Positions 38,777-53,657 of a DNA stretch of 64,000 bases are shown piece after piece. The position numbers and the translations under genes were made by a program. The stretch lies in IMG/VR virus record IMGVR_UViG_3300032242_002041, positions 62,001-126,000 of that record, one strand, 5' to 3'. The notes beneath the pieces were generated by a model. It saw only the letters and a program-made list of their open reading frames with translations, was not told where the DNA came from and searched no databases. Position 1 is the stretch's first letter. The number at the start of each line of letters is the position of its first letter.

Positions 38777-39842
38777 GTTAATTGTAGACACACACAGTGA
38801 AATTTACAGCATGATTCGTAATTGTGCTGATGGTATATTTTGGAATCTGGAACAGCATATTCAAAAAAATGAACTGGTGCCTGATGCAATTTATGTAATT
38901 GGTCGAGAACAAACACGCCTGTATAACAAACAACTGCGTACACTGATTGAAACCGCTGGCATAAAAGTTATCTTTAGTAATCCACACGAAGGGTCTGAAA
39001 CTTTAAAAAATCACTGTTATCAGTATGGCATTGCAGATTTGGTCTTGTCGGGTAAAATTTTATTAGTTGGTGGCGGTGATATGGAAAGCTTTTGGCCTCA
39101 TTTGCAGTATGATAGTTTTTTACCTAAAATTTTAAATTATGATGAAAATCTTTTGGCCATTGCAGATTACAAAGAAAAGTTTACAACACAACGTCCTTAT
39201 AAATTTTTGTTGCTGAATGGTCGAGCACGAGAACATAGAATACAACTGCTGGCTAAACTTGAAGGCATATTGGATCAAGCAATCTGGACCAATTTAGATT
39301 CTTCTGCTGGTCCTATACGACCGCTGGATCCAAGGTATGAATACAGCCATGTGATCAGCAACACACCACTGCCAGTTTCTGGATTTGTCAAACATCAGTT
39401 GTTTGATAACAAATGGGGCGATGTTTATATCAAACCAGAACTATATCAAGATACCTATTTTAGTATAGTTACCGAAACTGTGTTTGATTACCCGTACAGT
39501 TTTAGAACAGAAAAAATTTGGAAACCCATAGCAATTGGGCATCCTTGGATAGCAGTAGCCAACGCAGGCTTTTACAGAGACATGCACAATTTAGGATTTC
39601 AAACATTTAAAAACACAATCGATGAGTCATTTGATCAAATTGAAAACAATGCGGATCGTCTGGATCGCATCGCTCAAGTTGTTCTGGACTTATGTCAACA
39701 AGACCTTGTGACTTTTATAAAAGAGTGTTATAATGTATGTAAATACAATCAGCAACACCTTGCTGAACTAAGTCAAAAAGTTCCGCAAGAGTTCCCCAAC
39801 CGTTTTTTCCAATTTATTAAGAAATATCAATTCAATGAATGA
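38760..39842 (+). CDS. Putative glycosyltransferase (GT10-like TEK motif), paralog 2
   Basis: FLLLNGRAREHR; SIVTET..RTEKIWKP..HPWI..GFQTF..DESFD. Confidence 0.5.
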   Translation: MLGSRKLIVDTHSEIYSMIRNCADGIFWNLEQHIQKNELVPDAIYVIGREQTRLYNKQLRTLIETAGIKVIFSNPHEGSETLKNHCYQYGIADLVLSGKILLVGGGDMESFWPHLQYDSFLPKILNYDENLLAIADYKEKFTTQRPYKFLLLNGRAREHRIQLLAKLEGILDQAIWTNLDSSAGPIRPLDPRYEYSHVISNTPLPVSGFVKHQLFDNKWGDVYIKPELYQDTYFSIVTETVFDYPYSFRTEKIWKPIAIGHPWIAVANAGFYRDMHNLGFQTFKNTIDESFDQIENNADRLDRIAQVVLDLCQQDLVTFIKECYNVCKYNQQHLAELSQKVPQEFPNRFFQFIKKYQFNE

Positions 39843-41172
39843 CTTAGAGTTTCGTAAGCAGGTTCTTGACACTAAAAGTGCCAGCTTTTGTGCGGCCAAA
39901 TGGTACAATGCAACTATTTGGCTAGGTAGTGGTATGACTACAAGCTGTCATCATCCACCTGCACACAAGATTGATCTAGAGGAAATTAAAACTCGTCCTA
40001 GTGCTATACACAACACAGTAGAAAAGAAGATAGATCGACTAAACATGCAGTTAGGCAATCGTCCCAGAGGTTGTGAGTATTGTTGGAAGATCGAAGACAT
40101 GGGTCGCGATGCCATTAGCGACCGTGTATATAAAAGTAAAATTTACCCTATAGAGGCTTTAGATGAAGCAAATAACACCCCACACCAAGCGGACATCAAT
40201 CTTCGTACACTTGAAATCGCATTCGATCGCACTTGCCAATTTGCTTGTAGCTATTGTAACCCTGCTTTCAGTAGTACATGGGTTCGAGACATACAACGCA
40301 ACGGCCCCTATGAGCGTCTGGTGTCTGATGGGCGTAATCACTTTACTCACAGTCACGATAGTGCTCAACTATACCGGTTTGGTGAAGTTAATCCATATAG
40401 CGAAGCGTTCTTTAAGTGGTGGGAAACAGACCTACACAAGACTCTTCAAGAACTAAGAATCACCGGTGGTGAGCCGTTAATGAGCGGTGAAACGTGGAAG
40501 CTGATTGATTGGTTTAAAAATAATCCTGGACGTAGTCAAACACGCTTGGCTATTAATAGTAATCTAGGCAACGAAGTTGATGTAGATAGATTACTAGACG
40601 CAACTCAAAATATTAGTTTAGATTTGTATACCAGTATGGAAAGTGTTGGCCAACCAGCAGAGTATATCCGTGATGGCTTGAACTATTCAGCTTGGGTTAT
40701 GAACATGATCAAGTTGATGGATAGTAAGCGTCTGCGTGGCCTGCACGTTATGTGTACTATTAATGCATTATGCTTAGATACACTTCCAAAACTGCTGACA
40801 GTGTTCATGCGCTGGAAACACCAGTACGGACCGGACTTTCCTAATTTTACTTTAAATATTTTAAGGTTTCCTAGTTTTCAAAGCCCGCTAGTTTTACCAG
40901 ATGATATGCGTACACGTCACAAAGAACAATTGCAAGCCTGGCTTGACACCAATACTACCGATCCTATGTTACAAGAGCACGAACGCAACCATGTACAACG
41001 CCTGATTGATTATTTAGACGTAGTTAAAACTCCGCACAGTGATGCTTTTGAAATGCCCAAGCTACACAACGATTTTAAACAATTTTATCAACAATATGAT
41101 CAACGTCGTGGCAAGAACTTTACACAAACATTCTCTAACTTAGCAAAGTGGTATGACTCAATACAAATATAA
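39835..41172 (+). CDS. Radical SAM protein with N-terminal twitch-like domain
   Basis: CAAKW..SCHHP..CEYCW; CQFACSYC; TGGEP. Confidence 0.9.
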   Translation: MNDLEFRKQVLDTKSASFCAAKWYNATIWLGSGMTTSCHHPPAHKIDLEEIKTRPSAIHNTVEKKIDRLNMQLGNRPRGCEYCWKIEDMGRDAISDRVYKSKIYPIEALDEANNTPHQADINLRTLEIAFDRTCQFACSYCNPAFSSTWVRDIQRNGPYERLVSDGRNHFTHSHDSAQLYRFGEVNPYSEAFFKWWETDLHKTLQELRITGGEPLMSGETWKLIDWFKNNPGRSQTRLAINSNLGNEVDVDRLLDATQNISLDLYTSMESVGQPAEYIRDGLNYSAWVMNMIKLMDSKRLRGLHVMCTINALCLDTLPKLLTVFMRWKHQYGPDFPNFTLNILRFPSFQSPLVLPDDMRTRHKEQLQAWLDTNTTDPMLQEHERNHVQRLIDYLDVVKTPHSDAFEMPKLHNDFKQFYQQYDQRRGKNFTQTFSNLAKWYDSIQI

Positions 41173-42412
41173 CTCCGCCGATCTAGTACAGCCTGTAGAG
41201 CTGACAGAACGTGAAGAATTCTTATTAAAAGATTCAAAAACGTTTTGCATCTATCCATGGATACACTTACACGCTTACCCAACAGGCGAAGCATATCCTT
41301 GCTGTCATGCTGAAATGGCATACCCTGTGGGCAATGCTCGTTATAAAACACTAGAAGAAATTTATCGTGACGCACCTATGCGCAGCCTACGTGATGATAT
41401 GTTAAACGAGCGTCCTAATCCTGCTTGTGGTCGTTGCTATGAGCAAGAAGAGTCTGGATTTTTTAGTGGCCGCCGATCGGCCAACAAGCACCACGGGCAT
41501 CATATCAAGCGCATCGATGATGACAAATTTCAAATGAGCTACTGGGACATACGCTTCAGTAACCTGTGTAACCTAAGTTGTCGTAGCTGTGGACATATAT
41601 TCAGTTCAAGCTGGTATCAGGATCAGGCCAAATTAGCCGGTGGCACATGGAAGGAACAGAATCAGGCATTAAACTATGCCGGACGCACAGAAACAGACAT
41701 GTGGGAACAGTTGATTCCGCACTTGGACTATGTAGAACAAATATATTTTGCTGGCGGCGAGCCATTAATGATGAAAGAGCACTATAATATTTTAGATGAA
41801 CTAGAACGTAGAGGTCGCTTTGATGTGCGTTTAATTTACAATACTAACTTTACACAAACTAAGTTAAAAGATCGCACAGTGTTTGATTATTGGAAGAAGT
41901 TTAAAAGTGTAGCGGTTGGCGCAAGTTTAGACGATCAACACGGTCGTGCTGAATATATTCGCCGCGGCACAGAATGGCATAAAGTACTAGCTAATCGTGC
42001 TGAAATGATTCGTACTTGTCCAAATGTAGATTTTTATATAAGCCCTACATTAAGTATAATGAATGCTTGGAGTCTGACAGATTTTCATCGCCAGTGGACC
42101 GAAACAGGGCTAATACGGGCACAGGATCTTAATGTAAATATTCTTCAGGACCCAGCATACTATAGAATAGATATTGCCACACCGGATTATAAACAAAAAC
42201 TAATTGCTCGTTATCAAGAGCATCTTGAATGGTTACGTCCGCAAGACCCCTTACAACGTGCAACAGTGGGATTTGAAAGTGCTATTAATTTTTTACAAAC
42301 CACAGATAATACTGCACTGCTACCAAAGTTTTGGGCAAAGACGCACGAACTTGATGCAATACGTAACGAGAACATACTAGAAGTAATACCCGAATTGAAA
42401 GAATTACTATGA
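41153..42412 (+). CDS. Radical SAM protein with N-terminal twitch-like domain
   Basis: CIYPW..YPCC..CGRC; CNLSCRSC; AGGEP. Confidence 0.9.
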   Translation: MTQYKYNSADLVQPVELTEREEFLLKDSKTFCIYPWIHLHAYPTGEAYPCCHAEMAYPVGNARYKTLEEIYRDAPMRSLRDDMLNERPNPACGRCYEQEESGFFSGRRSANKHHGHHIKRIDDDKFQMSYWDIRFSNLCNLSCRSCGHIFSSSWYQDQAKLAGGTWKEQNQALNYAGRTETDMWEQLIPHLDYVEQIYFAGGEPLMMKEHYNILDELERRGRFDVRLIYNTNFTQTKLKDRTVFDYWKKFKSVAVGASLDDQHGRAEYIRRGTEWHKVLANRAEMIRTCPNVDFYISPTLSIMNAWSLTDFHRQWTETGLIRAQDLNVNILQDPAYYRIDIATPDYKQKLIARYQEHLEWLRPQDPLQRATVGFESAINFLQTTDNTALLPKFWAKTHELDAIRNENILEVIPELKELL

Positions 42413-43626
42413 ACATTCCACACGATAAATTTTGCGTACTACCTTGGGTCAGTTTAGAAACCAGCCCAATTGGCACAGTACGTCCTTGTTGTCTAGCCGA
42501 GGATGAACTGGTAGACAATGATGGCAATAAATTTGATTTGTCTACTGCTAGTTTTAGTAGCATACAAACAAGTAACAGTATGCAACGCTTGCGACAAGAG
42601 TTTATAGATAAAAAACAACCACAGACTTGTCGTAAATGTTTTCGTGAAGAACGTGCAGGCCGTACCAGTAAACGTATGCATACCTTGGATAGACTTAAAC
42701 ACATGCTACCCGATCAAGAGTGGACAGCAGATGCCAAGCCTTTGATGTTTTTAGATTTAAAATTAGGAAACATTTGCAATTTAAAATGTCGTATCTGCGG
42801 GTCATGGAGCTCCAGTACCTTTGCTACGGAAGAACTACAGTGGTTAAGATATAACGAAGATCGCAAAGATAATCATCACTATCGGATGTTACAGCAAGGC
42901 GCATGGCCTAGAGAAAATCCTACATTTTGGACTGAAATAGAAAAAGTCAGCGAGCAAATACAGTATATAGAATTTACCGGCGGCGAACCCTTTATGATTC
43001 GGGAGCATTTTAACATGCTACAAGGGTTAGTTGATCGTGGAATTGCCAGTGGGATAGAAATACACTATAATACCAACGGCACACAATGGCCAGAACATGC
43101 AGAAGCTATATGGCAGCATTTTAAAGCAGTTGAAATAGCATTTAGTATTGACGATGTGGGTGAGCGTTTTGAGTATCAACGCTCAAATGCCGTATGGACA
43201 GAAGTAGAGGCAAATATAGCTCGCTTTAAAGAATTAAAAAATCGTAATACAAATATACAATTACAGGTATGTAGTACTGTTAATGTGTTCAATGTTTACT
43301 ATCTTGAAACCCTGGCTAACTGGATTGGCCAACAAGGATTTGATTTTGTTTACTGGAATATGATGCACGAAGCATATTATTTTAGTATTAATACTCTGCC
43401 TGAAACAGCTAAACAAGCCATTGCTGAACATTTGATAACAGCTCAAGTTGACGGTCGCACAAGAGTAGAATTTGACCGCATCATAGATTTTATGAATAAC
43501 GGCGTTAGTCTTGATGGTAATATTCTGCGTATGCGTATAGCCGATTTAGATCGCAAACGAGAACAAAACTTAGCTCAAGTCAAGCCAGAGTTCGCTAAAC
43601 TTATAGATTATAATGGACCAGACTGA
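42409..43626 (+). CDS. Radical SAM protein with N-terminal twitch-like domain
   Basis: CVLPW..RPCC..CRKC; CNLKCRIC; TGGEP; NTNG. Confidence 0.9.
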   Translation: MNIPHDKFCVLPWVSLETSPIGTVRPCCLAEDELVDNDGNKFDLSTASFSSIQTSNSMQRLRQEFIDKKQPQTCRKCFREERAGRTSKRMHTLDRLKHMLPDQEWTADAKPLMFLDLKLGNICNLKCRICGSWSSSTFATEELQWLRYNEDRKDNHHYRMLQQGAWPRENPTFWTEIEKVSEQIQYIEFTGGEPFMIREHFNMLQGLVDRGIASGIEIHYNTNGTQWPEHAEAIWQHFKAVEIAFSIDDVGERFEYQRSNAVWTEVEANIARFKELKNRNTNIQLQVCSTVNVFNVYYLETLANWIGQQGFDFVYWNMMHEAYYFSINTLPETAKQAIAEHLITAQVDGRTRVEFDRIIDFMNNGVSLDGNILRMRIADLDRKREQNLAQVKPEFAKLIDYNGPD

Positions 43627-44908
43627 TACCCTGTGCATGGCACCGTGGACACACACTTATCTAAGTCCACAAACAGAACGCCGTATGTGCTGTGCTAGCC
43701 GCGAACCTGCACAGAGCTTTGAACAGTATATAGATACTGGTTCTGGAACAGGCCAATACCATCCACTAACTCTTGAAGAACACTGGAATTCAGAGCATAT
43801 GCGTTCGGTCAGACGCAGAATGATGGCTGGGGAAACTTTACCCGAGTGCGACGTGTGTAACAGTAAACTATTAAACACAGACGTTTACCGCAGTTATTTT
43901 AATCAATTATTTGCTCACAAGCGTGATGAAGTTATAGCCAACACAGACGCCACTGGTTATACTACTGTAAAACCGGTTAGTTGGGATTATCGTTTTAGTA
44001 ATCTCTGCAACTTTAAATGTCGTACATGCGGGGACATGTTGTCTAGCAGTTGGGAAGTTGAACAACGCACCAACAATATGATTGACTGGACAAATAGTAA
44101 AAACAATTGGATGCGCCCAGCGGTACGAAAAGAAATTAGTCAGTTCCAAGATACTCAAATTGAGCAAGAGTTCGCCCAAGCAGTAGAACAACATCGTGTA
44201 GAAGAAGTATATTGGGTCGGCGGCGAACCTTTGATGTATGAACAACACTGGCGCTATATGCGTCGTATAATTGAATTAGGAGATGGACCACGTGTTTACG
44301 CTAGATACAATACTAACCTTAGTCGTGTTAATTACAGGGGTGTCAGCTTGTATGCTGATATTCTTGCCCACATTCGTGACTGGCAAATCTGCGCAAGTCT
44401 TGACGGAACAGGAGCCACAGGAGAATACATCCGTACAGGACTGGACTACCCTGCTTGGCTAGAAAATTTTAAACAAGGACTTGACTATGCACAGCATCGT
44501 AGACAGATGCGTATAGACTTTACGCTGACCTTACCAGGCTTGTTTGAAGTAGCACGTATACAGCAACTAGCAGATGAGTTGGGAGTAGACATATTGGCCA
44601 AAGTAGTATTCAGCTTTTCGCCAGATATTATCTTAAGCCCGTTAGCATTGCCTAGAGAGTTACTGGACAAAACGATAGATAGTCTAGTAACCAATTTGCC
44701 TGCAGGTGCATTACAGGACGTGTTGCTACAGTTAAAGCATCGTCCTACATTTAGTGAACAATGGCCAGATACACATCAAGCTGGATTAGTTCGAGGCAAA
44801 CAACGTATGCTAAAATTAGAAGCCATACGCGGCGATGCTTATCGACTTGCGGATATATTAAATAATGATAAAGATATAGGAGCATGGTATGAATCAATTG
44901 TTACTTGA
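43613..44908 (+). CDS. Radical SAM protein with N-terminal twitch-like domain
   Basis: CMAPW..RMCC..CDVC; CNFKCRTC; VGGEP; SLDG. Confidence 0.9.
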   Translation: MDQTDTLCMAPWTHTYLSPQTERRMCCASREPAQSFEQYIDTGSGTGQYHPLTLEEHWNSEHMRSVRRRMMAGETLPECDVCNSKLLNTDVYRSYFNQLFAHKRDEVIANTDATGYTTVKPVSWDYRFSNLCNFKCRTCGDMLSSSWEVEQRTNNMIDWTNSKNNWMRPAVRKEISQFQDTQIEQEFAQAVEQHRVEEVYWVGGEPLMYEQHWRYMRRIIELGDGPRVYARYNTNLSRVNYRGVSLYADILAHIRDWQICASLDGTGATGEYIRTGLDYPAWLENFKQGLDYAQHRRQMRIDFTLTLPGLFEVARIQQLADELGVDILAKVVFSFSPDIILSPLALPRELLDKTIDSLVTNLPAGALQDVLLQLKHRPTFSEQWPDTHQAGLVRGKQRMLKLEAIRGDAYRLADILNNDKDIGAWYESIVT

Positions 44909-45944
44909 CGTAATAGAAATGGATCTTGGGACTCCAGGCAATTTGTTCACGGTTTACATCGATGTACACAATAGCAGTTTAGGTCGCAAATGGTTAACAG
45001 CACTGAATGAGTTAATTCGTAAAGATTATCATTTAGAAAAGAACTATTGTTTCTTTGGGTTTGCTGATAGCGAGCGCGACGGTGCTTATCTAATAACACA
45101 AATTAATACCAGCATAGCAGAAATCAATGCGGCCAAACTTGGCTATATAATCAATGATGTATTCACATTGGAATCTGTCGTGGATTCAGAATATCAATTA
45201 AATCACGAGCGGTTTAATCAGTTGCATCGTTACTTTGAAGACTTACAGGGCGTAAGTGGTCGCATGAGCCCTTACTATAATGATGCTGACACAGCCACAC
45301 GCTGGCATATTCGCCAGCTAAATTTGCTGTGTCATGAGTTTGAATCCTGGGCATTAAGCTATCGCAAAAAACATACAGCTCCCGAATGGCAACGGCCCAG
45401 TCAACTCATGTGCTGGTTAAACAGTCCACGCTTTATATTAGATGATGAAGACTATGAACTATTTGGCATAGAAAGCATTAATCGCCCAATGGGTGGAGTA
45501 TTTGTTGGAGTTAATAAAGCTGTGGGCAAGCATCATTGGGAAGTATTTGTTGATGAAGCTGGCTACGATCCAGAACATCGTACTGACTCATTAACCACAA
45601 CAACGCTAAAACCACAAACTGAAGCTGCTGGCGATTTTGATATAGAGTGGGCACAAAATCCAGCAGGTAACCCGTGGCAAACCAAACACTTGGCAGACTT
45701 TAGAACTTGGTTAATAAACAACGGATTTGATCCAGATGATAAATCATTGACCATTGGGCATCCACAGGTAGGACAAGTGGATTTAGCTCGTAGCTTTGGT
45801 ACAGAAGATTACCGCTACGTATGGGCCAAGTTAAATACACATCTAAATGTATATGCTATTAGAACTAGTAACGCCACAGTAGTATATGAATACAGCTGGA
45901 ATGACGTAGATTATAAGGAGCACCAAATAAAATGTCTTGGATAA
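44889..45944 (+). CDS. Hypothetical protein with His/Glu motifs
   Basis: 351 aa; AGGAG RBS; NQLHRYFE and LNLLCHEFE. Confidence 0.7.
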   Translation: MNQLLLDVIEMDLGTPGNLFTVYIDVHNSSLGRKWLTALNELIRKDYHLEKNYCFFGFADSERDGAYLITQINTSIAEINAAKLGYIINDVFTLESVVDSEYQLNHERFNQLHRYFEDLQGVSGRMSPYYNDADTATRWHIRQLNLLCHEFESWALSYRKKHTAPEWQRPSQLMCWLNSPRFILDDEDYELFGIESINRPMGGVFVGVNKAVGKHHWEVFVDEAGYDPEHRTDSLTTTTLKPQTEAAGDFDIEWAQNPAGNPWQTKHLADFRTWLINNGFDPDDKSLTIGHPQVGQVDLARSFGTEDYRYVWAKLNTHLNVYAIRTSNATVVYEYSWNDVDYKEHQIKCLG

Positions 45945-46033
45945 AAAATATTATCAATCGTATTAAGTTAGAAATTCGTTATCGTAAAAAATTAAAAAAA
46001 ATGTACGACGAAGATCCTTTTATTTACTTTTAA
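45932..46033 (+). CDS. 33-aa basic peptide, copy 1; absent from the ORF track
   Basis: MSWIKNIINRIKLEIRYRKKLKKMYDEDPFIYF*; fills the gap; paralog at 46555. Confidence 0.75.
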   Translation: MSWIKNIINRIKLEIRYRKKLKKMYDEDPFIYF

Positions 46034-46034
46034 T

Positions 46035-46568
46035 ATGAACATAACTATTCAAAAAGACATTTGTACTTGGATTACAGAATTTGTTGAGGTGAACCATAAA
46101 TTTTATAATTACAAATTCCCACCGTGTCCTTATGCTAAATCGGCTAGATTAAAAAATTTAGTCGATGTACAAGCATATGAACAAAATCCTATCACCTTTA
46201 CCTTAGATCAAATTGACAATTTATTACAACATAAAAAATTTAATGTAAGAGTGTTAGTGTACCCTTACTATATGCGATGGAATTATTTGTTGCGATGGAA
46301 AATAGATAAACTAAATCAAACATTAATAAAAGATGATTACTACGCACAATATGGAGCAGCAATTAGTACAAAAAGCCAATACCCTGGACTGTTTAAAAAT
46401 AAACCGTATTTTATTATTATAATTAATAAATTATCAGATGTGTTGGCAGCACAGGAATCACTAGACAAGACAGATTATTATCAAAATTGGACTCCTCAAC
46501 ATTATCATAATGTAGTTGTAAAAAGAAAAAACATATTTAGGAAAGTAAAACAAAATGTCATGGATTAA
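46035..46568 (+). CDS. Hypothetical AT-rich gene with a PPCPYA motif
   Basis: 177-aa ORF flanked by the two peptide genes. Confidence 0.7.
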   Translation: MNITIQKDICTWITEFVEVNHKFYNYKFPPCPYAKSARLKNLVDVQAYEQNPITFTLDQIDNLLQHKKFNVRVLVYPYYMRWNYLLRWKIDKLNQTLIKDDYYAQYGAAISTKSQYPGLFKNKPYFIIIINKLSDVLAAQESLDKTDYYQNWTPQHYHNVVVKRKNIFRKVKQNVMD

Positions 46569-46656
46569 AAATATTTACAATCGTATTACACTTGAAATTC
46601 GTTATCGCAAAAAGTTAAAAGAATTGCGCAAAAGAGATCCCTTTATCTACAAATGA
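46555..46656 (+). CDS. 33-aa basic peptide, copy 2; absent from the ORF track
   Basis: MSWIKNIYNRITLEIRYRKKLKELRKRDPFIYK*; ATGA overlap with the carbamoyltransferase start. Confidence 0.8.
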   Translation: MSWIKNIYNRITLEIRYRKKLKELRKRDPFIYK

Positions 46657-48107
46657 ATATTCTAGGTATTAGTGCAGGGTTTCATGACGCCTCTGCTACA
46701 GTAATCGACAGTGCAGGTAATATAGCGTATGCTGGACACGCAGAACGTTATAGCAAACGTAAGAATGACCCAGATTTACACCCAGCAATGTTTTGGGAAT
46801 TAGCCTGCGGACGTCATATTGATCATATTGCCTATTACGAAACTCCTTGGAAGAAACAGTTACGTCAACTATATTCAGGACAAGGTGTAGAGTGGTCAAA
46901 GTTAACTACTCATCAGATACTGAAGAAGCAACTGCAGGGATTCTTCAGCCATGTTCCTACTACAACATACAATCATCATTTAAGTCACGCAGCCGCAGGC
47001 TTTCAAACAAGTCCGTTTGATCAGGCCACAGTAGTTGTTATTGATGCCATTGGAGAGTGGGATACTATTAGTATTTTTGGAGCAGAATATAGTAGTGCAG
47101 GCCGCGCAACATACAAGCGGCTTTGGAGACAACGTTATCCTCAAAGCCTTGGATTATTTTATAGTGCTATTACAGAACGTATCGGTTTACGCCCAATGGA
47201 AGATGAATATATTACCATGGGCATGAGTGCTTGGGGTAAGCCTGCATATACCGATACCATGAGTATCCTGCTCAAAGAAAACTTGCACGTGGGCATTGAT
47301 CACATGTTCTTGCCTTTGGCACGAGACGTAGACATTGCCGCAAGTGCGCAGGCCATCATTGAACAAGAGATATATAGTGTAATGCAACGAGCCCGTGACT
47401 TTGGGTGGAGCTCAAATTTAGTATATCAAGGCGGAGTTGCACTTAACTGTCTTGCAAATAGATATCTTGGTGAATATTTTGAAGAAATATGGATTATGCC
47501 TAACCCTGGCGATGCTGGTAGCAGTCTTGGAGCTGCTGCCCTCGCCTATGGTGGGCCAATTAAGTTTGATCATGCATTCCTGGGTACAGAAATCAGCGGC
47601 GACTATCCTGTTGATGCCATCATCCGTAGCTTACTCAGGGATAAGATCGTTGGAGTTGCTTCAGGACGAGCCGAATTCGGTCCTAGGGCACTGGGTAATA
47701 GAAGTCTCCTCGCCGACCCCAGAGGACCGGATATAAAGGATCGAGTAAATGAAATCAAGCGTAGACAGCAATTTAGGCCATTTGCGCCGGTTATTCTGGA
47801 GGAATATGCTGATCAGTATTTTGATATCCCTAGTGGTTTCTGTGACACTAGGTATATGCAGGTCGTCGGTCGTTGTAGGCATCCTGACCTATTTCCTGCT
47901 ATTACCCACATTGACGGTACTAGTAGGATACAGACTGTGCCTAAAGACAGAAGTGGAATCAGACAGTTACTAGAAGCCTGGCATGACAGAACCAATTGCC
48001 CTATGTTATTAAACACCAGCCTTAACATACGCGGCGAGCCAATGGTAAACGATCGTCGAGATGCCGACCGTTTTGAACAGCTATACGGAGTCAAGGTACA
48101 TAGCTAA
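46653..48107 (+). CDS. O-carbamoyltransferase, NodU/CmcH/TobZ family
   Basis: HDASA, ERYSKRK, HHLSHAA, DAIGE, GGVALNC, GDAG, EFGPRALGNRS, RPFAP and NTSLNIRGEP. Confidence 0.95.
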   Translation: MNILGISAGFHDASATVIDSAGNIAYAGHAERYSKRKNDPDLHPAMFWELACGRHIDHIAYYETPWKKQLRQLYSGQGVEWSKLTTHQILKKQLQGFFSHVPTTTYNHHLSHAAAGFQTSPFDQATVVVIDAIGEWDTISIFGAEYSSAGRATYKRLWRQRYPQSLGLFYSAITERIGLRPMEDEYITMGMSAWGKPAYTDTMSILLKENLHVGIDHMFLPLARDVDIAASAQAIIEQEIYSVMQRARDFGWSSNLVYQGGVALNCLANRYLGEYFEEIWIMPNPGDAGSSLGAAALAYGGPIKFDHAFLGTEISGDYPVDAIIRSLLRDKIVGVASGRAEFGPRALGNRSLLADPRGPDIKDRVNEIKRRQQFRPFAPVILEEYADQYFDIPSGFCDTRYMQVVGRCRHPDLFPAITHIDGTSRIQTVPKDRSGIRQLLEAWHDRTNCPMLLNTSLNIRGEPMVNDRRDADRFEQLYGVKVHS

Positions 48108-48886
48108 TGAATAAAAATATTATATTTTGTGGAGATAGTTTTGCCGCCAGTTATAAGGAAGTCGGTGTGTGTTTTTATTATCCTGGTTGCCAAAATAATC
48201 CACTCAATAATAATCAAGACCGCGGTCGCGGTCCAATCAAGTGGTCCATAGCGCACCCTAGTCAAGTAGCCAGCCACTATGGATATAATTTGTATAATTT
48301 TGCATATGGTGGTAAAAGTTGGTGGTACAGTAGATGTGTAATGTTTAATTATTTGCGTGATTTTCCGGAGCTACTGGAAAATACTCAAGCCATGGTATTC
48401 TTTCATACTGACTCGCACCGTTTAAATATCAGTTCAAAATTTGAGTCTGACAACAACACCTGGAAGACCGTACAGAAATTGTGGAAAATGGATCTAATAG
48501 ACGAGGATTTTCAACCTTGGGCTCAAATGCAATGGTTTAAAGAAATTGATCAACATTTCGGTTCAGTACCTAGCATACATTTTCACTGTTTTCCAGAAAC
48601 TGTACAATACGATTCTTTTTTGCCAGGTATGAGGTTTACTACACCATTGATACACTTATCTGTAGGCGAACTCACTGGATCTGATTCAGAAATAAGTACC
48701 CAATTAAGTGACAACGAAACTCGTGTCAATCATTTAAATGCACACAATAACCAAGCATTAGCTGATGTAATTATCAATGCGTTAGATAACTATCAACCGG
48801 GTAGTTATCCTATAGACACTTCAAAGTTTGATCTGATCAATCCCAATGCCAGTAAATGGCCCACACTGGGTTATGGAACTAAGTAA
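48107..48886 (+). CDS. SGNH/GDSL-like protein (possible esterase or acyltransferase)
   Basis: FCGDSFA, N.AYGGKS and NHLN motifs. Confidence 0.55.
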   Translation: MNKNIIFCGDSFAASYKEVGVCFYYPGCQNNPLNNNQDRGRGPIKWSIAHPSQVASHYGYNLYNFAYGGKSWWYSRCVMFNYLRDFPELLENTQAMVFFHTDSHRLNISSKFESDNNTWKTVQKLWKMDLIDEDFQPWAQMQWFKEIDQHFGSVPSIHFHCFPETVQYDSFLPGMRFTTPLIHLSVGELTGSDSEISTQLSDNETRVNHLNAHNNQALADVIINALDNYQPGSYPIDTSKFDLINPNASKWPTLGYGTK

Positions 48887-48891
48887 ACATA

Positions 48892-50178
48892 ATGAATCCA
48901 CCAATATTTCCAATACAAACAGAAACAGGGTGTCTGCTTAAATGGGCCTGGAGTACTATATATCTAGGGCAGGGCAAGACAGCAAGTTGTCATAGAGTTG
49001 ATCAACATACAATAGATCCCAATAATGTTGGTAATTTTCATAATCAACCTGAAAAGATACTGGCCAGAGAATTAATGCTCGACGGTAAATGGCCTGGCAA
49101 AGGATGCGAATACTGTAAAAAAATTGAAGATGCCGGCGGCATGAGCGATCGTATATATCAGCTAGAACAAGTTGAAAACAATAAAAATTATGAAATAATT
49201 CCCAAGGCATTGGTAAACAATCCACAGGCCACTCATGTGGTTCCTACCATATTAGAGATATACTTTAACAATACTTGCAACATGAGCTGTTTATATTGTG
49301 GCAGTCATTTTAGCTCCAAGTGGGAAGAAGAAAATCGTCGATTTGGGGAATATCGTAGTGAACGCTTGCGCTTTGGCTACAACTTGGCACAGAATCCCAA
49401 TTATGAACAAATGCTAGCCGACTTCTGGACCTGGTTAGCAAAAGACAATAATTATTTACATATTAGACAATATCAAATAGCCGGAGGTGAACCCTTTTAT
49501 CAGAAAGAATTTGATCAGAGCATTGAATTTTGGGAACAGCATCCCAATCCTGATCTTACTTTCAATATGATAACTAATCTTAAAGTGGCACCCAAAAAGT
49601 TTCGCAGCTACATAGACAAGTTTGGTGACATGGTTCGCGATGGAAAGCTAAGGAAATTACAAATCAGCAGCAGCTTAGACTGCTGGGGCCCCGAACAAGA
49701 ATATGTGCGTTGGGGATTAGATCTCAGTGAATGGCAGGAAAATTTTGAATATCTATTAGATAAACCCTGGGTGCAACAGTGCATCAACAGTGCTGTTAGC
49801 GCACTTACTATAAAGACACTGCCAGAGTTAATTAAAAATATAATACAATGGAATAGTCAGGCAGAAGGAATAAAAAAAATATACTATAGTTTTATGAGTA
49901 TCATGTATCCTAAACAAATGGATCCTGCTATATTTGGCGCTGGCGTGTTTGACGATGACTTTGCACTGGTATTAGAATTAATGGATCAAATTCCTAATCC
50001 TTCGCCTGCTGATCGGTCCAGTAGAGCACACATGCAAGGTATAGCACAACAAATAGCACAAGCACCTAGAGATGTAAACAGCATTGAGTGTTTACAAGAA
50101 TATCTTACTGAACTAGATCGTCGCCGCGATACCAATTGGCGCGAGTTATTTCCCTGGTTAGATCGAGACTGGCGCTAA
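48892..50178 (+). CDS. Radical SAM protein with N-terminal twitch-like domain
   Basis: CLLKW..SCHR..CEYC; CNMSCLYC; AGGEP. Confidence 0.9.
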   Translation: MNPPIFPIQTETGCLLKWAWSTIYLGQGKTASCHRVDQHTIDPNNVGNFHNQPEKILARELMLDGKWPGKGCEYCKKIEDAGGMSDRIYQLEQVENNKNYEIIPKALVNNPQATHVVPTILEIYFNNTCNMSCLYCGSHFSSKWEEENRRFGEYRSERLRFGYNLAQNPNYEQMLADFWTWLAKDNNYLHIRQYQIAGGEPFYQKEFDQSIEFWEQHPNPDLTFNMITNLKVAPKKFRSYIDKFGDMVRDGKLRKLQISSSLDCWGPEQEYVRWGLDLSEWQENFEYLLDKPWVQQCINSAVSALTIKTLPELIKNIIQWNSQAEGIKKIYYSFMSIMYPKQMDPAIFGAGVFDDDFALVLELMDQIPNPSPADRSSRAHMQGIAQQIAQAPRDVNSIECLQEYLTELDRRRDTNWRELFPWLDRDWR

Positions 50179-51458
50179 AACCAAGGTGCCCATTCTGGCA
50201 CTACTTCAACTAGTGGTTTTTTACTCACTGAATCTTCCTTGCGAATGTGTCTAACAAATTGAGGTATAAACTCTGGACAATGCTCTGTGTATTCTATAAC
50301 ACTAATATAGCGATCAACTAATTCTCTATAATAGTTATCGTAAATAGTATCTGCAGAAAATCTAAGGCGCCCATTGGCAAGTCTTGATAACGCTAATTGT
50401 CTTAGTTCTGGTGGCAATGCGCCCACGCCTAAATGATCTACTCTAAACACCGGACTCACGTTAATATAACTACGCGGTAAATGTATAGGATAAGTGGGTC
50501 CAATTTTATTATCATATGCCCAATTAATAAAATCCATAATACTAGTAGCATTAATGGCAGACAATACGTAGTTAATAACTGTAGATATGCTAGGATGAAA
50601 CATCAGCTCTAAACTGTTGGCCTCAACGTCAGACCATCGACATCCTCTACGCTGATACTCTATAACTGATTCAGTGCCATCGATACTGACATTGTATATT
50701 ACTTGTTTAAAATGTTTGAACTTGTCCATCAGCTCGTTGGCACTGCTGCTAGCATTGGTCAGCAAAGTTATCATGATGTTTTTAGCTAGATCTTTTTCAA
50801 TCAAGTAATCCATTATTTTATGAACTTGTTTTTGTAGCGCAGTTTCGCCACCGGTAAAGTTAATAATTTCCACACGATCCAACACTGAATAAAAATCTGG
50901 GTCTGTAGGATTTAACACTATTTTTTCTTTACGTCCTAATACCTGAACTTCAAAGGTCTGTCGCTGACTACTGGCACCTCCGGCACACATAACACAACTA
51001 TAATTACAGTAATTACTTGGATAGTAATCTAAAGTAAGTATATCTTTAACTGTGTTATTATTGGAAACAATTTCTTGAACCTCTTTAACAATATCTACAC
51101 TAAGAAATTCACTGTAAAATTTGTTGTTCATTTGTCTAGGACTGGTTGCGCCCGCCTGTTCGTTGCGAGAACAACTTGCACAATCGGATATTTGTTCCAA
51201 TTGACCGTCGATCATGGCCTGACGTATACTGCGCCAATTTTCACTGTTTCTAGAATCTACAACACTGTTATTAATTACATCCCATTTATTGCGATTATTG
51301 CTCATCACAATACTACAAGGACGAACACTGTTAGGCAGGCTATCCACAGATGTAGGAACTACATTATTAGTTTGATAGAAAGCTCCGAAGAATGGGTACA
51401 AGCATATTTTTTCTCCTAGCTCGTTATATATGTGATCAAGTTGATTAATTGGATTCAT
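50175..51458 (-). CDS. Radical SAM protein with N-terminal twitch-like domain (start 51458 or 51482)
   Basis: CLYPF..RPCS..CASC; CNYSCVMC; TGGET; SIDG. Confidence 0.88.
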   Translation of the reverse strand: MNPINQLDHIYNELGEKICLYPFFGAFYQTNNVVPTSVDSLPNSVRPCSIVMSNNRNKWDVINNSVVDSRNSENWRSIRQAMIDGQLEQISDCASCSRNEQAGATSPRQMNNKFYSEFLSVDIVKEVQEIVSNNNTVKDILTLDYYPSNYCNYSCVMCAGGASSQRQTFEVQVLGRKEKIVLNPTDPDFYSVLDRVEIINFTGGETALQKQVHKIMDYLIEKDLAKNIMITLLTNASSSANELMDKFKHFKQVIYNVSIDGTESVIEYQRRGCRWSDVEANSLELMFHPSISTVINYVLSAINATSIMDFINWAYDNKIGPTYPIHLPRSYINVSPVFRVDHLGVGALPPELRQLALSRLANGRLRFSADTIYDNYYRELVDRYISVIEYTEHCPEFIPQFVRHIRKEDSVSKKPLVEVVPEWAPWF

Positions 51459-52545
51459 GGCATATTTCTTTAAGACTTGCATTGTATATTATGTTTAAGC
51501 CTTGGCTAGTTACACGATTATATACTTGTTTTAGTTCAGCTATGGCTTGTTGGTGTTCAGGGTGAGCAGAGTTGCCCACAACATCGTGATTTAAATAGTC
51601 ATCCCAGGTTCCCCAATCTTCTAATCTATTAATAATACCTTGAAATCCATAGTGTGTACATAAATCAACAAATTGTTGTTGATCATTCCAATTGCCTTTT
51701 TGCAAGACAAATTTAAGTAACACATGTGCATTAGTCTGTCGAACTAGGTCCTGCAAAAAATCTAAATTTTTAATTAATTGATCAAAGCGACCCGGTTGTC
51801 GCACTTGTTCGTATACGTCGGCTGACCCGGCATCTATACTAATATAATATTGTGTAATATTGTTAACAATAGAATTGTTGTCCAATTGCTTGGATAATAA
51901 TAATCCATTGGTAAACAAACGCAAACTATGATTACTTTTGGGCTGATAGTTATGTAATAATGGACGCATAATGTTGCTGGCCAGTGGATCACCGTTGCCC
52001 GTCATTATTATGTGTGTAGGAGCATCAAATTTTTCTAATAACTCAATCACGTGATTTACCATGGCCAATCGACGGTCGTAATCAGCTCCAGAATTAGACA
52101 TGATCGGATGAGCCCTACAACTAGGACAAGCTAAATTGCAACTGTCGTCAATATTGATACTAATATAGTAGCAACGATAACTTTTGTCTATAGTCTTACT
52201 AGGACTGACAGCAGCATAATTGTTGGTCAATCGATCAGAATTTAATATTCCACAACGATCTACCGCACAATGAGTAAACTTGCGATCATCAATATCTTTT
52301 TGTAAACTACGAGCTACAGGACTAAGCCAAATGTCTTCTAGTCTAGAAAAGTTCATGATATTGCCCACTGACATGGGTAACCAAGCTTCGCATGCACAGA
52401 CAAAACATTCGCCTTTTCGGTCAATGACTAGGGTATATGATGGAAAATCACAGTGATTGGTAATGTTGAGTTTTAAATCTTTATTACGTGGTATATTAGT
52501 ATAACTGTGTTGATTGTCAATGGGAATTATTGGGTATGTATACAT
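51445..52545 (-). CDS. Radical SAM protein, divergent subtype with N-terminal Cys domain
   Basis: CDFP..CFVCAC..HCAVDRC; CNLACPSC; GNGDPL; FTNG; SIDAG. Confidence 0.88.
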   Translation of the reverse strand: MYTYPIIPIDNQHSYTNIPRNKDLKLNITNHCDFPSYTLVIDRKGECFVCACEAWLPMSVGNIMNFSRLEDIWLSPVARSLQKDIDDRKFTHCAVDRCGILNSDRLTNNYAAVSPSKTIDKSYRCYYISINIDDSCNLACPSCRAHPIMSNSGADYDRRLAMVNHVIELLEKFDAPTHIIMTGNGDPLASNIMRPLLHNYQPKSNHSLRLFTNGLLLSKQLDNNSIVNNITQYYISIDAGSADVYEQVRQPGRFDQLIKNLDFLQDLVRQTNAHVLLKFVLQKGNWNDQQQFVDLCTHYGFQGIINRLEDWGTWDDYLNHDVVGNSAHPEHQQAIAELKQVYNRVTSQGLNIIYNASLKEICHESN

Positions 52546-52551
52546 GGCAAC

Positions 52552-52557
52552 TATTTA
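52552..52557 (-). promoter_or_regulatory. Late-type TAAATA box
   Basis: Intergenic, 6 nt before ATG 52545. Confidence 0.5.
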
Positions 52558-52581
52558 TTGACCTGTTGTGCTCTTGGACAT

Positions 52582-53607: not shown

Positions 53608-53657
53608 TCTTTCTTTGTACGATATTTAAACTAAAATTATGTTGGGAGTATTTTTTA

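What the first reader, a model, noticed from the sequence alone, without database searches (positions are those of the whole stretch)
45932..46656. Two unannotated paralogous 33-aa peptides bracket an AT-rich gene beside the carbamoyltransferase
Seen: MSWIKNIINRIKLEIRYRKKLKKMYDEDPFIYF and MSWIKNIYNRITLEIRYRKKLKELRKRDPFIYK share 25 of 33 residues with many synonymous changes. They differ mainly in a 5-residue patch that flips from acidic (KMYDE) to basic (ELRKR). Copy 2 is ATGA-coupled to the carbamoyltransferase. Inference, three options: (a) an accessory subunit of the carbamoyltransferase, duplicated when gene 46035 inserted; (b) RiPP-type precursor peptides for the neighbouring radical SAM enzymes, given the conserved W/Y/F residues; (c) homology arms for cassette exchange.
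Basis: partly seen in the sequence, partly recalled or inferred. Interest (0 to 1): 0.68.

Follow-up and report, generated by a model that had tools for sequence, protein, structure and literature searches.

The report
Conserved phage mini-protein heading enzyme genes
Two copies of a 33-residue, very basic peptide gene, kept almost unchanged by hundreds of giant phages, each sit directly in front of a tailoring-enzyme gene and pass ribosomes into it; the peptide is real and under extreme selection, but its biochemical role is still open.

Summary
Both 33-aa ORFs (45932-46033 and 46555-46656) exist, share 25/33 residues, and bracket an AT-rich 177-aa gene just upstream of a NodU/TobZ-type carbamoyltransferase (CT).

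The window is part of a jumbo myophage, in the enzyme island next to its baseplate and fibre genes.

The peptide belongs to a large undescribed family:
- 261 IMG/VR loci and 160 representative clusters contain it.
- There is no Pfam, PHROG, NCBIfam or PDB hit.
- Residues 14-33 are nearly invariant despite saturated synonymous change (dN/dS about 0.014), so it is translated.

Copy 2 is the consensus type. Copy 1 is a diverged but intact paralog that travels with the 177-aa gene in other phages too.

Most peptide genes carry a Shine-Dalgarno-like site. The gene behind them has none and starts on or beside the peptide's stop (ATGA in 60 of 73 junction contexts). This holds for at least nine unrelated downstream families.

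- The RiPP-for-radical-SAM reading fails its own test: divergent homologs mostly occur singly, next to a CT, with no radical SAM gene nearby.
- A CT-specific subunit is weakened by CT-less peptide loci and by CTs without the peptide.
- My best guess, at low confidence, is a coupled leader cistron whose conserved C-terminus acts at the ribosome.
- A free partner or scaffold peptide remains nearly as likely.

The parts
45915..45920 (+). Shine-Dalgarno-like AAGGAG, 11 nt before the ATG of peptide copy 1. It lies inside the 3' end of gene 44889-45944.
   Evidence: Read. 84 of 100 distinct peptide genes have such a site.
45932..46033 (+). Peptide copy 1 (33 aa, ends DPFIYF). This is the diverged 'F-type' paralog that precedes the 177-aa gene. 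Its start overlaps the stop of gene 44889-45944 by 13 nt.
   Evidence: The same type sits upstream of a 46035 homolog in L089 (P0028), and a comparable diverged copy in L014/L020. The ORF is intact in all of them. dN/dS is about 0.45 against the L089 copy, on only 33 codons.
46035..46568 (+). 177-aa basic protein (pI 9.4) of unknown function, called w46035 in this report. It is AT-rich here, has no Shine-Dalgarno-like site, and starts one base after copy 1's stop.
   Evidence: No Pfam or NCBIfam hit; weak PHROG hits of unknown function. 116 homolog clusters, all hypothetical. AF2 pLDDT 88.6 with no convincing PDB fold match: best Z 6.2; Atlas matches are viral hypotheticals. Homologs are usually preceded by a peptide copy. 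In P0174 and P0181 the peptide motif is fused to the C-terminus.
46539..46545 (+). Shine-Dalgarno-like AGGAAAG, 9 nt before the ATG of peptide copy 2. It lies inside the 3' end of gene 46035-46568.
46555..46656 (+). Peptide copy 2 (33 aa, ends DPFIYK). This is the consensus type of the family. Its start overlaps the end of gene 46035 by 14 nt.
   Evidence: Residues 14-33 are identical to nearly all 80 related loci. dN 0.020 and dS 1.39 over codons 14-33.
46653..46656 (+). ATGA stop/start overlap between copy 2 and the carbamoyltransferase.
   Evidence: The same -4 junction occurs in 60 of 73 distinct contexts. The last Lys codon is AAA in 60 of 65 sequences.
46653..48107 (+). NodU/CmcH/TobZ-family carbamoyltransferase (484 aa) with no Shine-Dalgarno-like site of its own.
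   Evidence: Pfam Carbam_trans_N and Carbam_trans_C; phrog_1601; PDB relatives NovN, GdmN and TobZ; upstream sequence read.
44889..45944 (+). 351-aa conserved gene of unknown family, called w44889 in this report. It is the usual upstream neighbour of the peptide in close relatives.
   Evidence: Upstream in 62 of 80 loci. No family hit. AF2 pLDDT 89.4. Cyclophilin-like barrel with a helical insert at borderline Z of about 8. Absent from RsoM2USA.

Best explanation
Shown or nearly so (my confidence about 0.9):
- Both ORFs are translated members of a large, undescribed family of 30-36-aa, strongly basic phage peptides. The consensus of the window's clade is MxWIKNLINRIKLEIRYRKKLKELRKRDPFIYK.
- Each peptide heads a two-cistron unit. 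The peptide gene usually carries the ribosome-binding site. The following tailoring-enzyme gene has none and starts on or next to the peptide's stop codon.
- The enzyme is therefore presumably made by ribosomes that have just finished the peptide (inferred from the sequence layout; not measured).
- The window holds two such units in tandem: copy 1 then the 177-aa gene w46035 (46035-46568), and copy 2 then the carbamoyltransferase (CT). The first unit is a cassette that is present or absent among close relatives.

Inferred (the confidence given below refers to this part):
- The conserved C-terminal 20 residues (basic stretch plus DPFIYK) act in cis, as a nascent chain that fills the exit tunnel when the ribosome reaches the overlapping stop/start.
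- There they set how efficiently ribosomes terminate and re-initiate on the enzyme gene, possibly in response to a pathway metabolite.
- On this reading the peptide is a portable, sequence-specific leader that can be placed in front of any tailoring gene.
For: Translation and selection:
- 65 distinct coding sequences keep residues 14-33 while using 2-6 codons per position, including CGN/AGA switches.
- dN/dS is about 0.014 for codons 14-33, against 0.22 for codons 2-13 and 0.16 for a conserved stretch of the CT.

Conservation pattern:
- Across 110 divergent representatives, conservation rises towards the C-terminus: DPFIYK 3.4-4.25 bits, YRKKLK 3.0-3.5 bits.
- The match ends at the protein's last residue in 104 of 153 matched stretches.
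- Length stays at 30-36 aa, about what the exit tunnel holds (own knowledge).

Coupling:
- A Shine-Dalgarno-like site precedes 84 of 100 peptide genes and 0 of 100 overlapping downstream starts. The baseline is 20 of 41 genes in the window.
- 60 of 73 junction contexts are ATGA and 6 more are within one base.
- About 4 of 32 gene junctions in the window are ATGA, counted by me.
- The tight junction recurs with unrelated downstream genes: CT, DUF6071, w46035, methyltransferase, SAM synthetase, Trp halogenase, a GIY-YIG endonuclease, a cupin and a beta-lactamase-fold gene.

Fusion lineage:
- Where the motif is fused to the end of a w46035 homolog, it still ends in ATGA on the next gene.

Spread:
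- No constant protein neighbour exists.
- The family occurs in a Ralstonia phage and in metagenomic phage contigs from many samples.
- A universal partner such as the ribosome would fit this.

Precedent (own knowledge):
- SpeFL (34 aa), TnaC, and the nascent-peptide signal of T4 gene 60.
Against: - Nothing here measures stalling or re-initiation.
- Tight overlaps are common in this compact genome. Because the DPFIYK codons cannot hold a Shine-Dalgarno site, the overlap could be a by-product of the constraint on the peptide.
- The very last residue varies (K, F, W, R, E, D or absent), which is unusual for a termination-arrest peptide.
- The N-terminal half keeps an i/i+3/i+4 hydrophobic pattern (p about 0.04), as a folded helix would.
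- Only one or two copies occur per roughly 340-kb genome, always in the tailoring island. That suggests a pathway-specific biochemical role.
- There is no intergenic region of the kind that known bacterial leader peptides use for Rho- or SD-based control.
- The recurring link to the CT and to w46035, and the w46035 fusion, can equally be read as protein-level partnership.
Confidence: 0.3

Rival explanations
1. The free peptide is a small partner (subunit or adaptor) of the carbamoyltransferase-centred tailoring module. Translational coupling makes it in a fixed ratio with the enzyme. The free DPFIYK end docks into the partner.
For: - The carbamoyltransferase (CT) is by far the commonest gene directly behind the peptide: 57 of 80 close loci and 18 of 34 divergent loci, at only about 37% CT identity.
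- RsoM2USA has peptide, then DUF6071, then CT.
- Homologs of w46035 (the 177-aa gene at 46035-46568) nearly always have a peptide next to them, and two clusters carry it fused.
- The Kae1/TsaD superfamily, to which these CTs are related, works with small accessory subunits (own knowledge).
Against: - Peptide loci without any CT in 10-16 kb exist: L087, L107-type, L120, L136.
- CT homologs of S-CAM1, Mosig and C48C1 lack the peptide.
- The downstream gene belongs to at least nine unrelated families.
- No peptide-CT fusion appears among 160 representative clusters. The two apparent ones are frameshifted reads.
- Every residue around the helix is invariant, not just one face.
Confidence: 0.2
2. 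The peptide is a substrate or recycled scaffold on which the island's variable tailoring enzymes act. This would be RiPP-like in the broad sense, comparable to PqqA, MftA or the scaffold peptides of pearlin and LysW pathways. The chemistry would centre on the invariant D-x3-Y near the free C-terminus.
For: - The neighbours are group-transfer or oxidative tailoring enzymes typical of natural-product clusters: carbamoyl- and methyltransferases, Trp halogenase, TauD, cupin, SGNH-like DUF6071, beta-lactamase fold, MOSC, ATP-grasp-like, Asn synthase and SAM synthetase.
- Position at the C-terminus is strict, and Y32, P29 and D28 are invariant.
- Several variant copies per island occur.
- A peptide visited by many enzymes would be constrained at every residue.
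- PqqA has E-x3-Y near its end, and HypF (same superfamily as these carbamoyltransferases) carbamoylates a protein C-terminus (own knowledge).
Against: - No RRE, leader peptidase or exporter was found.
- No modifying enzyme is constant across loci.
- The narrower version, a precursor for the neighbouring N-terminal-twitch radical SAM paralogs, fails: 9 of 11 well-flanked divergent loci have no CxxxCxxC protein, and only 5 of 48 loci have that radical SAM family. I give that narrow version about 0.05.
- The peptide does not vary with the enzyme set.
- A +8 to +10 helical peptide is atypical for a RiPP.
- Many neighbours (NodU/NodS-like enzymes, sugar-nucleotide enzymes) fit glycan decoration instead.
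Confidence: 0.2
3. The peptide is a cationic, membrane-binding amphipathic helix. It would tether or localise tailoring enzymes at the inner membrane, in the way the C-terminal helices of FtsA or MinD, or SpoVM, bind membranes.
For: - Net charge is +5 and +8 for the two window copies; the family mean is +7.3.
- Hydrophobic positions 3, 4, 7, 8, 11 and 15 have helical periodicity (p about 0.04).
- The N-terminus (SWIKNIYNRITLEI) resembles the E. coli FtsA membrane helix GSWIKRLNSWLRKEF.
- It occurs as a C-terminal tail on w46035 (the 177-aa gene family of 46035-46568) in one lineage.
Against: - The hydrophobic moment is not above shuffled sequences (z 0.49).
- Periodicity over the whole helix is not significant (p 0.12).
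- The most conserved part is the basic stretch plus DPFIYK, not the amphipathic half.
- Lipid binding would not require K-versus-R invariance.
- The FtsA likeness covers only four identical residues in a row.
Confidence: 0.08
4. The repeats are only homology arms for cassette exchange, and the peptide itself has no function.
For: - Direct repeats flank the w46035 cassette (the 177-aa gene family of 46035-46568) in four lineages.
- Cassette presence is scattered on the tree.
- Many different genes are inserted at exactly this junction.
Against: - Synonymous sites are saturated while the amino acids are invariant. DNA identity between the two window copies is only 85% and 61% in the two parts of the gene.
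- The ORF, its length, its start and its stop are kept in hundreds of single-copy loci.
Confidence: 0.02

Closest known systems
Ribosome-arresting leader peptides that act at their own stop codon (SpeFL, 34 aa; TnaC, 24 aa). Recalled from own knowledge.
   Same: A short ORF directly upstream of an enzyme gene. Similar length. Conservation concentrated in the part that lies in the exit tunnel. The position of the stop codon is conserved. Basic character.
   Different: Those peptides control Rho termination through an intergenic region; here the stop overlaps the next start. Stalling is untested. The last residue varies. The setting is a phage, with many different downstream genes.
Nascent-peptide signal of phage T4 gene 60 translational bypassing. 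Own knowledge.
   Same: A T4-like phage context. A basic nascent peptide that acts inside the ribosome at a stop codon. Association with a mobile cassette.
   Different: No take-off and landing codons and no 50-nt gap here. The two ORFs are in different frames and are separate products.
PqqA and MftA precursor peptides; scaffold or carrier peptides (LysW, TglA, AmmA). Own knowledge.
   Same: A 20-50-aa peptide encoded inside an enzyme cluster. An invariant acidic-x3-Tyr or C-terminal Tyr motif. A free C-terminus is needed. Tailoring enzymes, including a halogenase, lie nearby in some relatives.
   Different: No RRE/PqqD, no dedicated radical SAM or ligase that always co-occurs, and no peptidase. 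The peptide is strongly basic. The radical SAM genes are absent from most divergent loci.
Small accessory subunits of Kae1/TsaD-type enzymes (Gon7, Pcc1, TsaE). Own knowledge.
   Same: The carbamoyltransferase belongs to the same superfamily (Pfam and PDB hits). A small protein is co-encoded with it.
   Different: No sequence or fold relation is shown. The peptide also occurs without a carbamoyltransferase.
Membrane-targeting helices (FtsA C-terminus, MinD, SpoVM).
   Same: A cationic helix with a Trp near its start. Local likeness to the FtsA tail, read from E. coli K-12.
   Different: The amphipathicity is statistically weak. The conserved core lies elsewhere.
Promoter-early stem-loop cassettes (PeSLs) that shuffle genes in T4-type phages. 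Own knowledge.
   Same: Repeated elements at the borders of exchangeable gene cassettes in a hypervariable region.
   Different: PeSLs are non-coding DNA/RNA elements. Here the repeat is a protein-coding gene selected at the amino-acid level.

Membership tests
RiPP precursor of radical SAM/SPASM maturases | Co-occurs with its radical SAM maturase | tested here: not met
   The N-terminal-twitch radical SAM family is present in only 5 of 48 divergent loci. 9 of 11 loci with at least 3 kb on each side have no CxxxCxxC protein.
RiPP precursor of radical SAM/SPASM maturases | RRE/PqqD-like recognition domain, leader peptidase or exporter in the cluster | tested here: not met
   None appeared in Pfam or NCBIfam scans of about 30 island proteins. 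The radical SAM proteins are NF033640, with an N-terminal twitch domain and no RRE.
RiPP precursor of radical SAM/SPASM maturases | Conserved leader with a more variable core | tested here: not met
   The pattern is reversed: the N-terminus varies and the C-terminal 20 aa are invariant.
RiPP precursor or scaffold peptide, broad sense | The peptide is covalently modified | not testable with these tools
   Needs mass spectrometry.
Leader or arrest peptide (SpeFL/TnaC type) | Short translated ORF immediately upstream of the controlled gene | tested here: met
Leader or arrest peptide (SpeFL/TnaC type) | Conservation concentrated in the C-terminal tunnel-resident part, with a conserved stop position | tested here: met
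   One search gives the information content per position; 104 of 153 matched stretches end at the C-terminus.
Leader or arrest peptide (SpeFL/TnaC type) | Regulatory spacer (rut site or SD-sequestering hairpin) between the leader and the gene | tested here: not met
   There is no spacer: ATGA overlap in 60 of 73 contexts.
Leader or arrest peptide (SpeFL/TnaC type) | Ribosome stalling that depends on the amino-acid sequence | not testable with these tools
   Needs toeprinting, ribosome profiling or reporters.
Accessory subunit of the NodU/TobZ-type carbamoyltransferase | Strict co-occurrence with the enzyme | tested here: inconclusive
   The carbamoyltransferase is the commonest neighbour. But peptide loci without it exist, and carbamoyltransferases without the peptide exist.
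Accessory subunit of the NodU/TobZ-type carbamoyltransferase | Physical binding | tested here: inconclusive
   The complex prediction gave no verdict. This is not evidence either way.
Membrane-targeting amphipathic helix | Amphipathic helix beyond what composition alone gives | tested here: inconclusive
   Hydrophobic moment 0.41-0.56. z against shuffles is 0.49. Column periodicity p = 0.04 for the N-terminal half and 0.12 overall.
Non-coding recombination cassette borders (PeSL-like) | Conservation at the DNA level rather than the protein level | tested here: not met
   dS is saturated while dN is about 0.02.
Any described protein family | A profile match | tested here: not met
   Pfam gave only a PriX match at E 0.04, below the cut-off. 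PHROGs, NCBIfam, PDB sequences and named Atlas clusters gave none.

The most novel reading that the evidence does not exclude
Jumbo and T4-like phages carry a conserved scaffold or precursor peptide. On its invariant D-x3-Y C-terminus, a changing set of phage tailoring enzymes (carbamoyl-, methyl- and halogen-transferring, oxidative, ATP-grasp-like) would build a small molecule or cofactor. That would be a RiPP-like pathway spread across hundreds of phage genomes.
Probability: 0.15. Interest if true: 0.9.

Novelty: new variant of a known kind. Interest (0 to 1): 0.6.

Why it matters
A 33-residue ORF that gene annotation can miss turns out to be one of the most strongly constrained genes of a large group of giant phages. 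It is the translational entry point for carbamoyltransferases and other tailoring enzymes in their hypervariable island.

- If it acts in the ribosome, it would be a portable, sequence-specific translational coupler. That is a new kind of phage gene-expression device and a possible tool.
- If it acts as a free peptide, it points to an unknown cofactor, scaffold or partner of phage tailoring chemistry.

Either way it gives a handle on what these enigmatic enzyme islands do. A cultured phage, RsoM2USA, carries a homolog, so the question can be tested at the bench.

Tried and rejected
- Complex prediction of the peptide with the carbamoyltransferase (CT) and w44889 (the 351-aa gene at 44889-45944) scored 0.00: no verdict, not evidence either way.
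- tblastn of the 33-aa peptide against GenBank phages found nothing. The query is short and the low-complexity filter was on. An HMM over six-frame ORFs later found the RsoM2USA homolog.
- The word-based protein search refuses queries under 40 aa. I therefore used the single exhaustive profile search, because the family scans had left the peptide open.
- A locus search with an alignment of divergent peptides failed for lack of a conserved block. I replaced it with a degenerate DNA pattern for DPYIYK plus TGA.
- PDB sequence search and named Atlas clusters gave no hit.
- A literature search for the motif gave zero papers. Searches on twitch-domain radical SAM and on jumbo phages gave only general context.
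- No RNA run holds the region.
- Foldseek and VIA searches for w44889 and w46035 (the 177-aa gene at 46035-46568) gave only borderline matches.
- Ideas dropped:
  - A frameshift fusion of w44889 with the peptide: the overlap length varies among loci.
  - The peptide as a split-off piece of the CT: the CT aligns with NovN from about residue 10, so no N-terminal part appears to be missing.
  - A recombination breakpoint inside copy 1: copy 1 is as close to the upstream copy of L089 as to copy 2.
  - Electrostatic complementarity: the CT is near neutral and w46035 is itself basic.
- No alternative genetic code was used.
Full report
**What is there**

- The window belongs to a 228-kb IMG/VR phage record that CheckV rates 66% complete. 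Its relatives measure 315-345 kb.
- Upstream of the finding lie baseplate genes and a 4454-aa ORF.
- Next comes a long enzyme island:
  - sugar-nucleotide enzymes;
  - eight radical SAM paralogs of NCBIfam NF033640 (N-terminal twitch domain) above that family's cut-off, plus one weaker match;
  - an ATP-grasp-like protein;
  - several proteins without a family;
  - a NodU/TobZ-type carbamoyltransferase (CT).
- This matches what has been described as the hypervariable 'host recognition cluster' of T4-like marine myophages, where radical SAM cassettes come and go (PMC7029224).
- Gene order at the finding is: 44889-45944 (351 aa, unknown, here called w44889), copy 1 (45932-46033), 46035-46568 (177 aa, unknown, here called w46035), copy 2 (46555-46656), then the CT (46653-48107).

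- The two peptides share 25 of 33 residues.
- Seven codons differ synonymously. Of the eight replacements, five form the patch at residues 23-27.
- The own genome holds exactly these two copies.
- The bracketed gene has GC 0.285 against 0.40-0.45 for its neighbours. Its homologs in other phages are not AT-rich.

**The peptide is a real, widespread, unnamed gene family**

- A search of IMG/VR found 261 loci; 80 were fetched.
- In those 80 loci, residues 14-33 (LEIRYRKKLKELRKRDPFIYK) are nearly invariant.
- Yet the 65 distinct DNA sequences use up to six codons per position.
- dN/dS by region:

| Region | dN/dS |
|---|---|
| Peptide codons 14-33 (dN 0.020, dS 1.39) | about 0.014 |
| Peptide codons 2-13 | 0.22 |
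| A conserved 33-codon stretch of the CT | 0.16 |

- A caveat: the 80 loci are the best of 261, so they are biased towards close relatives.
- A profile search of 1.84 billion representative proteins found 160 clusters. Nearly all listed hits are 27-156 aa long.
- In that broader set the order of conservation is DPFIYK, then YRKKLK, then the N-terminus. The match ends at the last residue of the protein in 104 of 153 matched stretches.
- No Pfam, PHROG, NCBIfam, PDB or named Atlas family matches. The motif appears in no searchable paper.
- The cultured Ralstonia jumbo phage RsoM2USA carries an unannotated 36-aa homolog ending in DPFIYK. It lies between genes 201 and 200.

**Copy 2 is the standard form; copy 1 is an old, diverged but intact paralog**

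- Copy 2 matches the consensus throughout residues 14-33. Copy 1 departs from it at residues 23-27 and at residue 33.
- The same arrangement (diverged peptide, w46035 homolog, consensus peptide) occurs in L089, L014/L020 and L083.
- Copy 1 is about as close to the upstream copy of L089 (83% and 72% DNA identity in the two parts of the gene) as to its own copy 2 (85% and 61%).
- Upstream copies keep the 33-codon frame, the YRKKL core and PFIY, but evolve faster. dN/dS is about 0.45 on only 33 codons, so this is a rough figure.
- On a tree of the flanking gene w44889, the four carriers of the cassette need four changes. The window's sister L007 (support 100/98) has a single peptide and no w46035.
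- So the peptide-plus-w46035 unit is gained or lost repeatedly. Recombination between the flanking peptide genes is a plausible route.

**Neighbours**

- Close relatives:
  - the peptide follows w44889 in 62 of 80 loci;
  - it is ATGA-overlapped with the CT in 57 of 80.
- In the remaining loci other genes sit at the same junction:
  - DUF6071 (SGNH-like);
  - SAM synthetase;
  - a tryptophan-halogenase-family protein;
  - a GIY-YIG/NUMOD3 endonuclease;
  - a w46035-like domain fused to a methyltransferase.
- To sample divergent lineages I scanned IMG/VR for DNA encoding DPYIYK plus TGA. That gave 38 stretches, with 34 family-member peptide ORFs in 33 of them.
- Genes directly behind those 34 peptides:

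| Downstream gene | Count |
|---|---|
| CT, full length or only the N-domain | 18 |
| Class-I methyltransferases | 6 |
| w46035 homolog | 4 |
| DUF6071 | 3 |
| Cupin-like family | 2 |
| Unassigned 114-aa ORF | 1 |

- The CT is therefore the commonest partner even at about 37% CT identity, and w46035 is a recurrent second.
- However, the CT is absent from 10-16 kb around the peptide in several lineages: L087, L107-type, L120, L136.
- The CTs of S-CAM1, Mosig and C48C1 have no peptide.
- RsoM2USA lacks w44889, w46035 and the ATP-grasp-like protein, but keeps the peptide, DUF6071, a CT and two twitch radical SAM genes.

**The radical SAM link is not general**

- The twitch radical SAM family appears in only 5 of 48 divergent loci.
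- Of the 11 loci with at least 3 kb on both sides:
  - all hold a single peptide;
  - 9 have a CT;
  - 9 have no protein with a CxxxCxxC motif.
- The CxxxCxxC screen is crude, and flanks of 3-7 kb are short.

**Translational anatomy**

- 84 of 100 distinct peptide genes have a Shine-Dalgarno-like site 5-18 nt upstream.
- None of the overlapping downstream starts has one, because those bases encode DPFIYK.
- In the window as a whole, 20 of 41 genes have such a site.
- Of 73 distinct junction contexts, 60 are ATGA, 4 overlap by one base and 2 have a one-base gap.
- The final Lys codon is AAA in 60 of 65 sequences. Other Lys positions use AAA:AAG at about 46:19.
- About one junction in eight in the window is ATGA, counted by me.
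- The tight junction recurs with at least nine unrelated downstream families, including the endonuclease.
- Part of the divergent sample was selected with TGA in the pattern, so only the first 73 contexts are unbiased.
- I conclude that each peptide ORF is the ribosome entry for the enzyme gene behind it.

**A fusion**

- Two clusters of w46035 homologs (P0174 and P0181) carry the peptide's C-terminal half fused in frame, ending in DPYIYK.
- These fusions are still ATGA-overlapped with the next gene, a beta-lactamase-fold protein. No CT lies within 12.6 kb.
- The N-terminal half of the peptide is therefore dispensable there. What persists is the basic stretch plus DP[FY]IYK at the end of a translated frame that abuts another gene.

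**The flanking unknowns**

- w44889 folds confidently (pLDDT 89.4) but has no Foldseek match. VIA gives many cyclophilin-like hits at Z about 8 plus a helical insert, which is borderline by the tool's own calibration.
- w46035 folds confidently (pLDDT 88.6) and is the only strongly basic protein of the island (pI 9.4). It has no convincing solved relative: best Z 6.2, and its Atlas neighbours are viral hypotheticals.

**How it most likely works**

- Shown:
  - the peptide is translated and under purifying selection;
  - the coupling architecture is as described;
  - the cassette is polymorphic among relatives.
- Inferred: why the residues are conserved. No single protein neighbour is constant, which weakens any model with a specific encoded partner.
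- Features that fit a nascent chain acting in the exit tunnel at the overlapping stop/start:
  - the conservation gradient towards the C-terminus;
  - the fixed end position and the 30-36-aa length;
  - invariance of every residue rather than one helix face;
  - the spread across many phage lineages;
  - survival of the C-terminal half in the fusion lineage.
- I put this cis model at about 0.3.
- Points against it:
  - the varying last residue;
  - the helical hydrophobic pattern of the N-terminal half (p about 0.04);
  - the lack of any spacer;
  - the restriction to one pathway island.
- A free peptide acting as partner of CT-type enzymes (about 0.2), or as substrate or scaffold for the tailoring enzymes (about 0.2), is nearly as likely.
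- A membrane-binding helix is a weaker option (about 0.08). The FtsA tail resembles the peptide's N-terminus, but the amphipathicity is not above shuffled sequences.
- The complex prediction gave no verdict and counts for nothing.

**Novelty and limits**

- The family is undescribed in the libraries and papers searched.
- The kind of thing it is (a leader cistron or a small accessory peptide) is known. The overlap-coupled, hyper-conserved, portable form in phages is a new variant.
- All functional statements are inference from sequence.
- No RNA data were found.
- Neighbourhood counts come from capped samples of loci, not from a full census.

Noticed in passing
L135:923-1540 and L136:6001-6609 (proteins P0174, P0181): Homologs of w46035 (the 177-aa gene at 46035-46568) with the peptide's C-terminal half fused in frame (…DPYIYK). 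They are still ATGA-overlapped with the next gene, a beta-lactamase-fold protein. A MOSC-domain gene lies upstream, and no carbamoyltransferase is in the locus.
   Followed up: partly
L003:7026-7136 (Ralstonia phage RsoM2USA, MG752970.1, between genes 201 and 200): An unannotated 36-aa ORF ending in DPFIYK, with a Shine-Dalgarno site. It sits one base before a DUF6071 gene that is followed by the carbamoyltransferase. This is a cultured system in which the family could be tested.
   Followed up: partly
L059:6099-7673; L073:6099-7202; L021:1795-2592; L083:4820-6004: In relatives, the junction behind the peptide holds a tryptophan-halogenase-family gene, a SAM synthetase, a GIY-YIG/NUMOD3 homing endonuclease, or a w46035-like domain (the family of the 177-aa gene at 46035-46568) fused to a class-I methyltransferase.
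   Followed up: partly
window 44889-45944: A 351-aa protein with no sequence family and a confident model (pLDDT 89). It shows a cyclophilin-like barrel with an inserted helical bundle at borderline Z of about 8. Invariant Cys, His, Glu and Asp residues suggest an enzyme.
   Followed up: partly
window 37361-54809, and elsewhere in the 228-kb record: At least ten paralogs of the N-terminal-twitch radical SAM family NF033640 above its cut-off in one phage genome; RsoM2USA has two. Their substrate is unknown.
   Followed up: no
window 52582-53607 (- strand): An ATP-grasp-like protein (only a faint PylC-like N-domain hit). It is the best conserved enzyme of the island among relatives (63-88% identity, mostly 74-88%) but is absent from RsoM2USA.
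   Followed up: partly
window 15153-28517: A single 4454-aa ORF directly after the baseplate wedge gene, very acidic (net charge -164). Presumably a giant fibre or structural protein; not examined.
   Followed up: no
L097:7067-8008, L104:5895-6842 and similar loci: In divergent phages the gene behind the peptide is only the N-terminal (Kae1-like) domain of the carbamoyltransferase (about 314 aa). It is followed by a separate ORF of about 480-490 aa, so the enzyme may be split.
   Followed up: no
protein P0008 (75 aa, metagenomic): Two peptide units joined in one frame, with no stop between them (…DPFIYKQEKYM…DPFIYK).
   Followed up: no
window 35618-36421: The UDP-glucose/GDP-mannose dehydrogenase homolog is only 267 aa, with N-terminal and central domains but no C-terminal domain. 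The next ORF (36414-37364) has no family hit.
   Followed up: no
own record G000:C1:55067-55522 (outside the window): A distant second paralog of the 177-aa gene at 46035-46568 (E 6e-12), with no peptide copy detected next to it.
   Followed up: no
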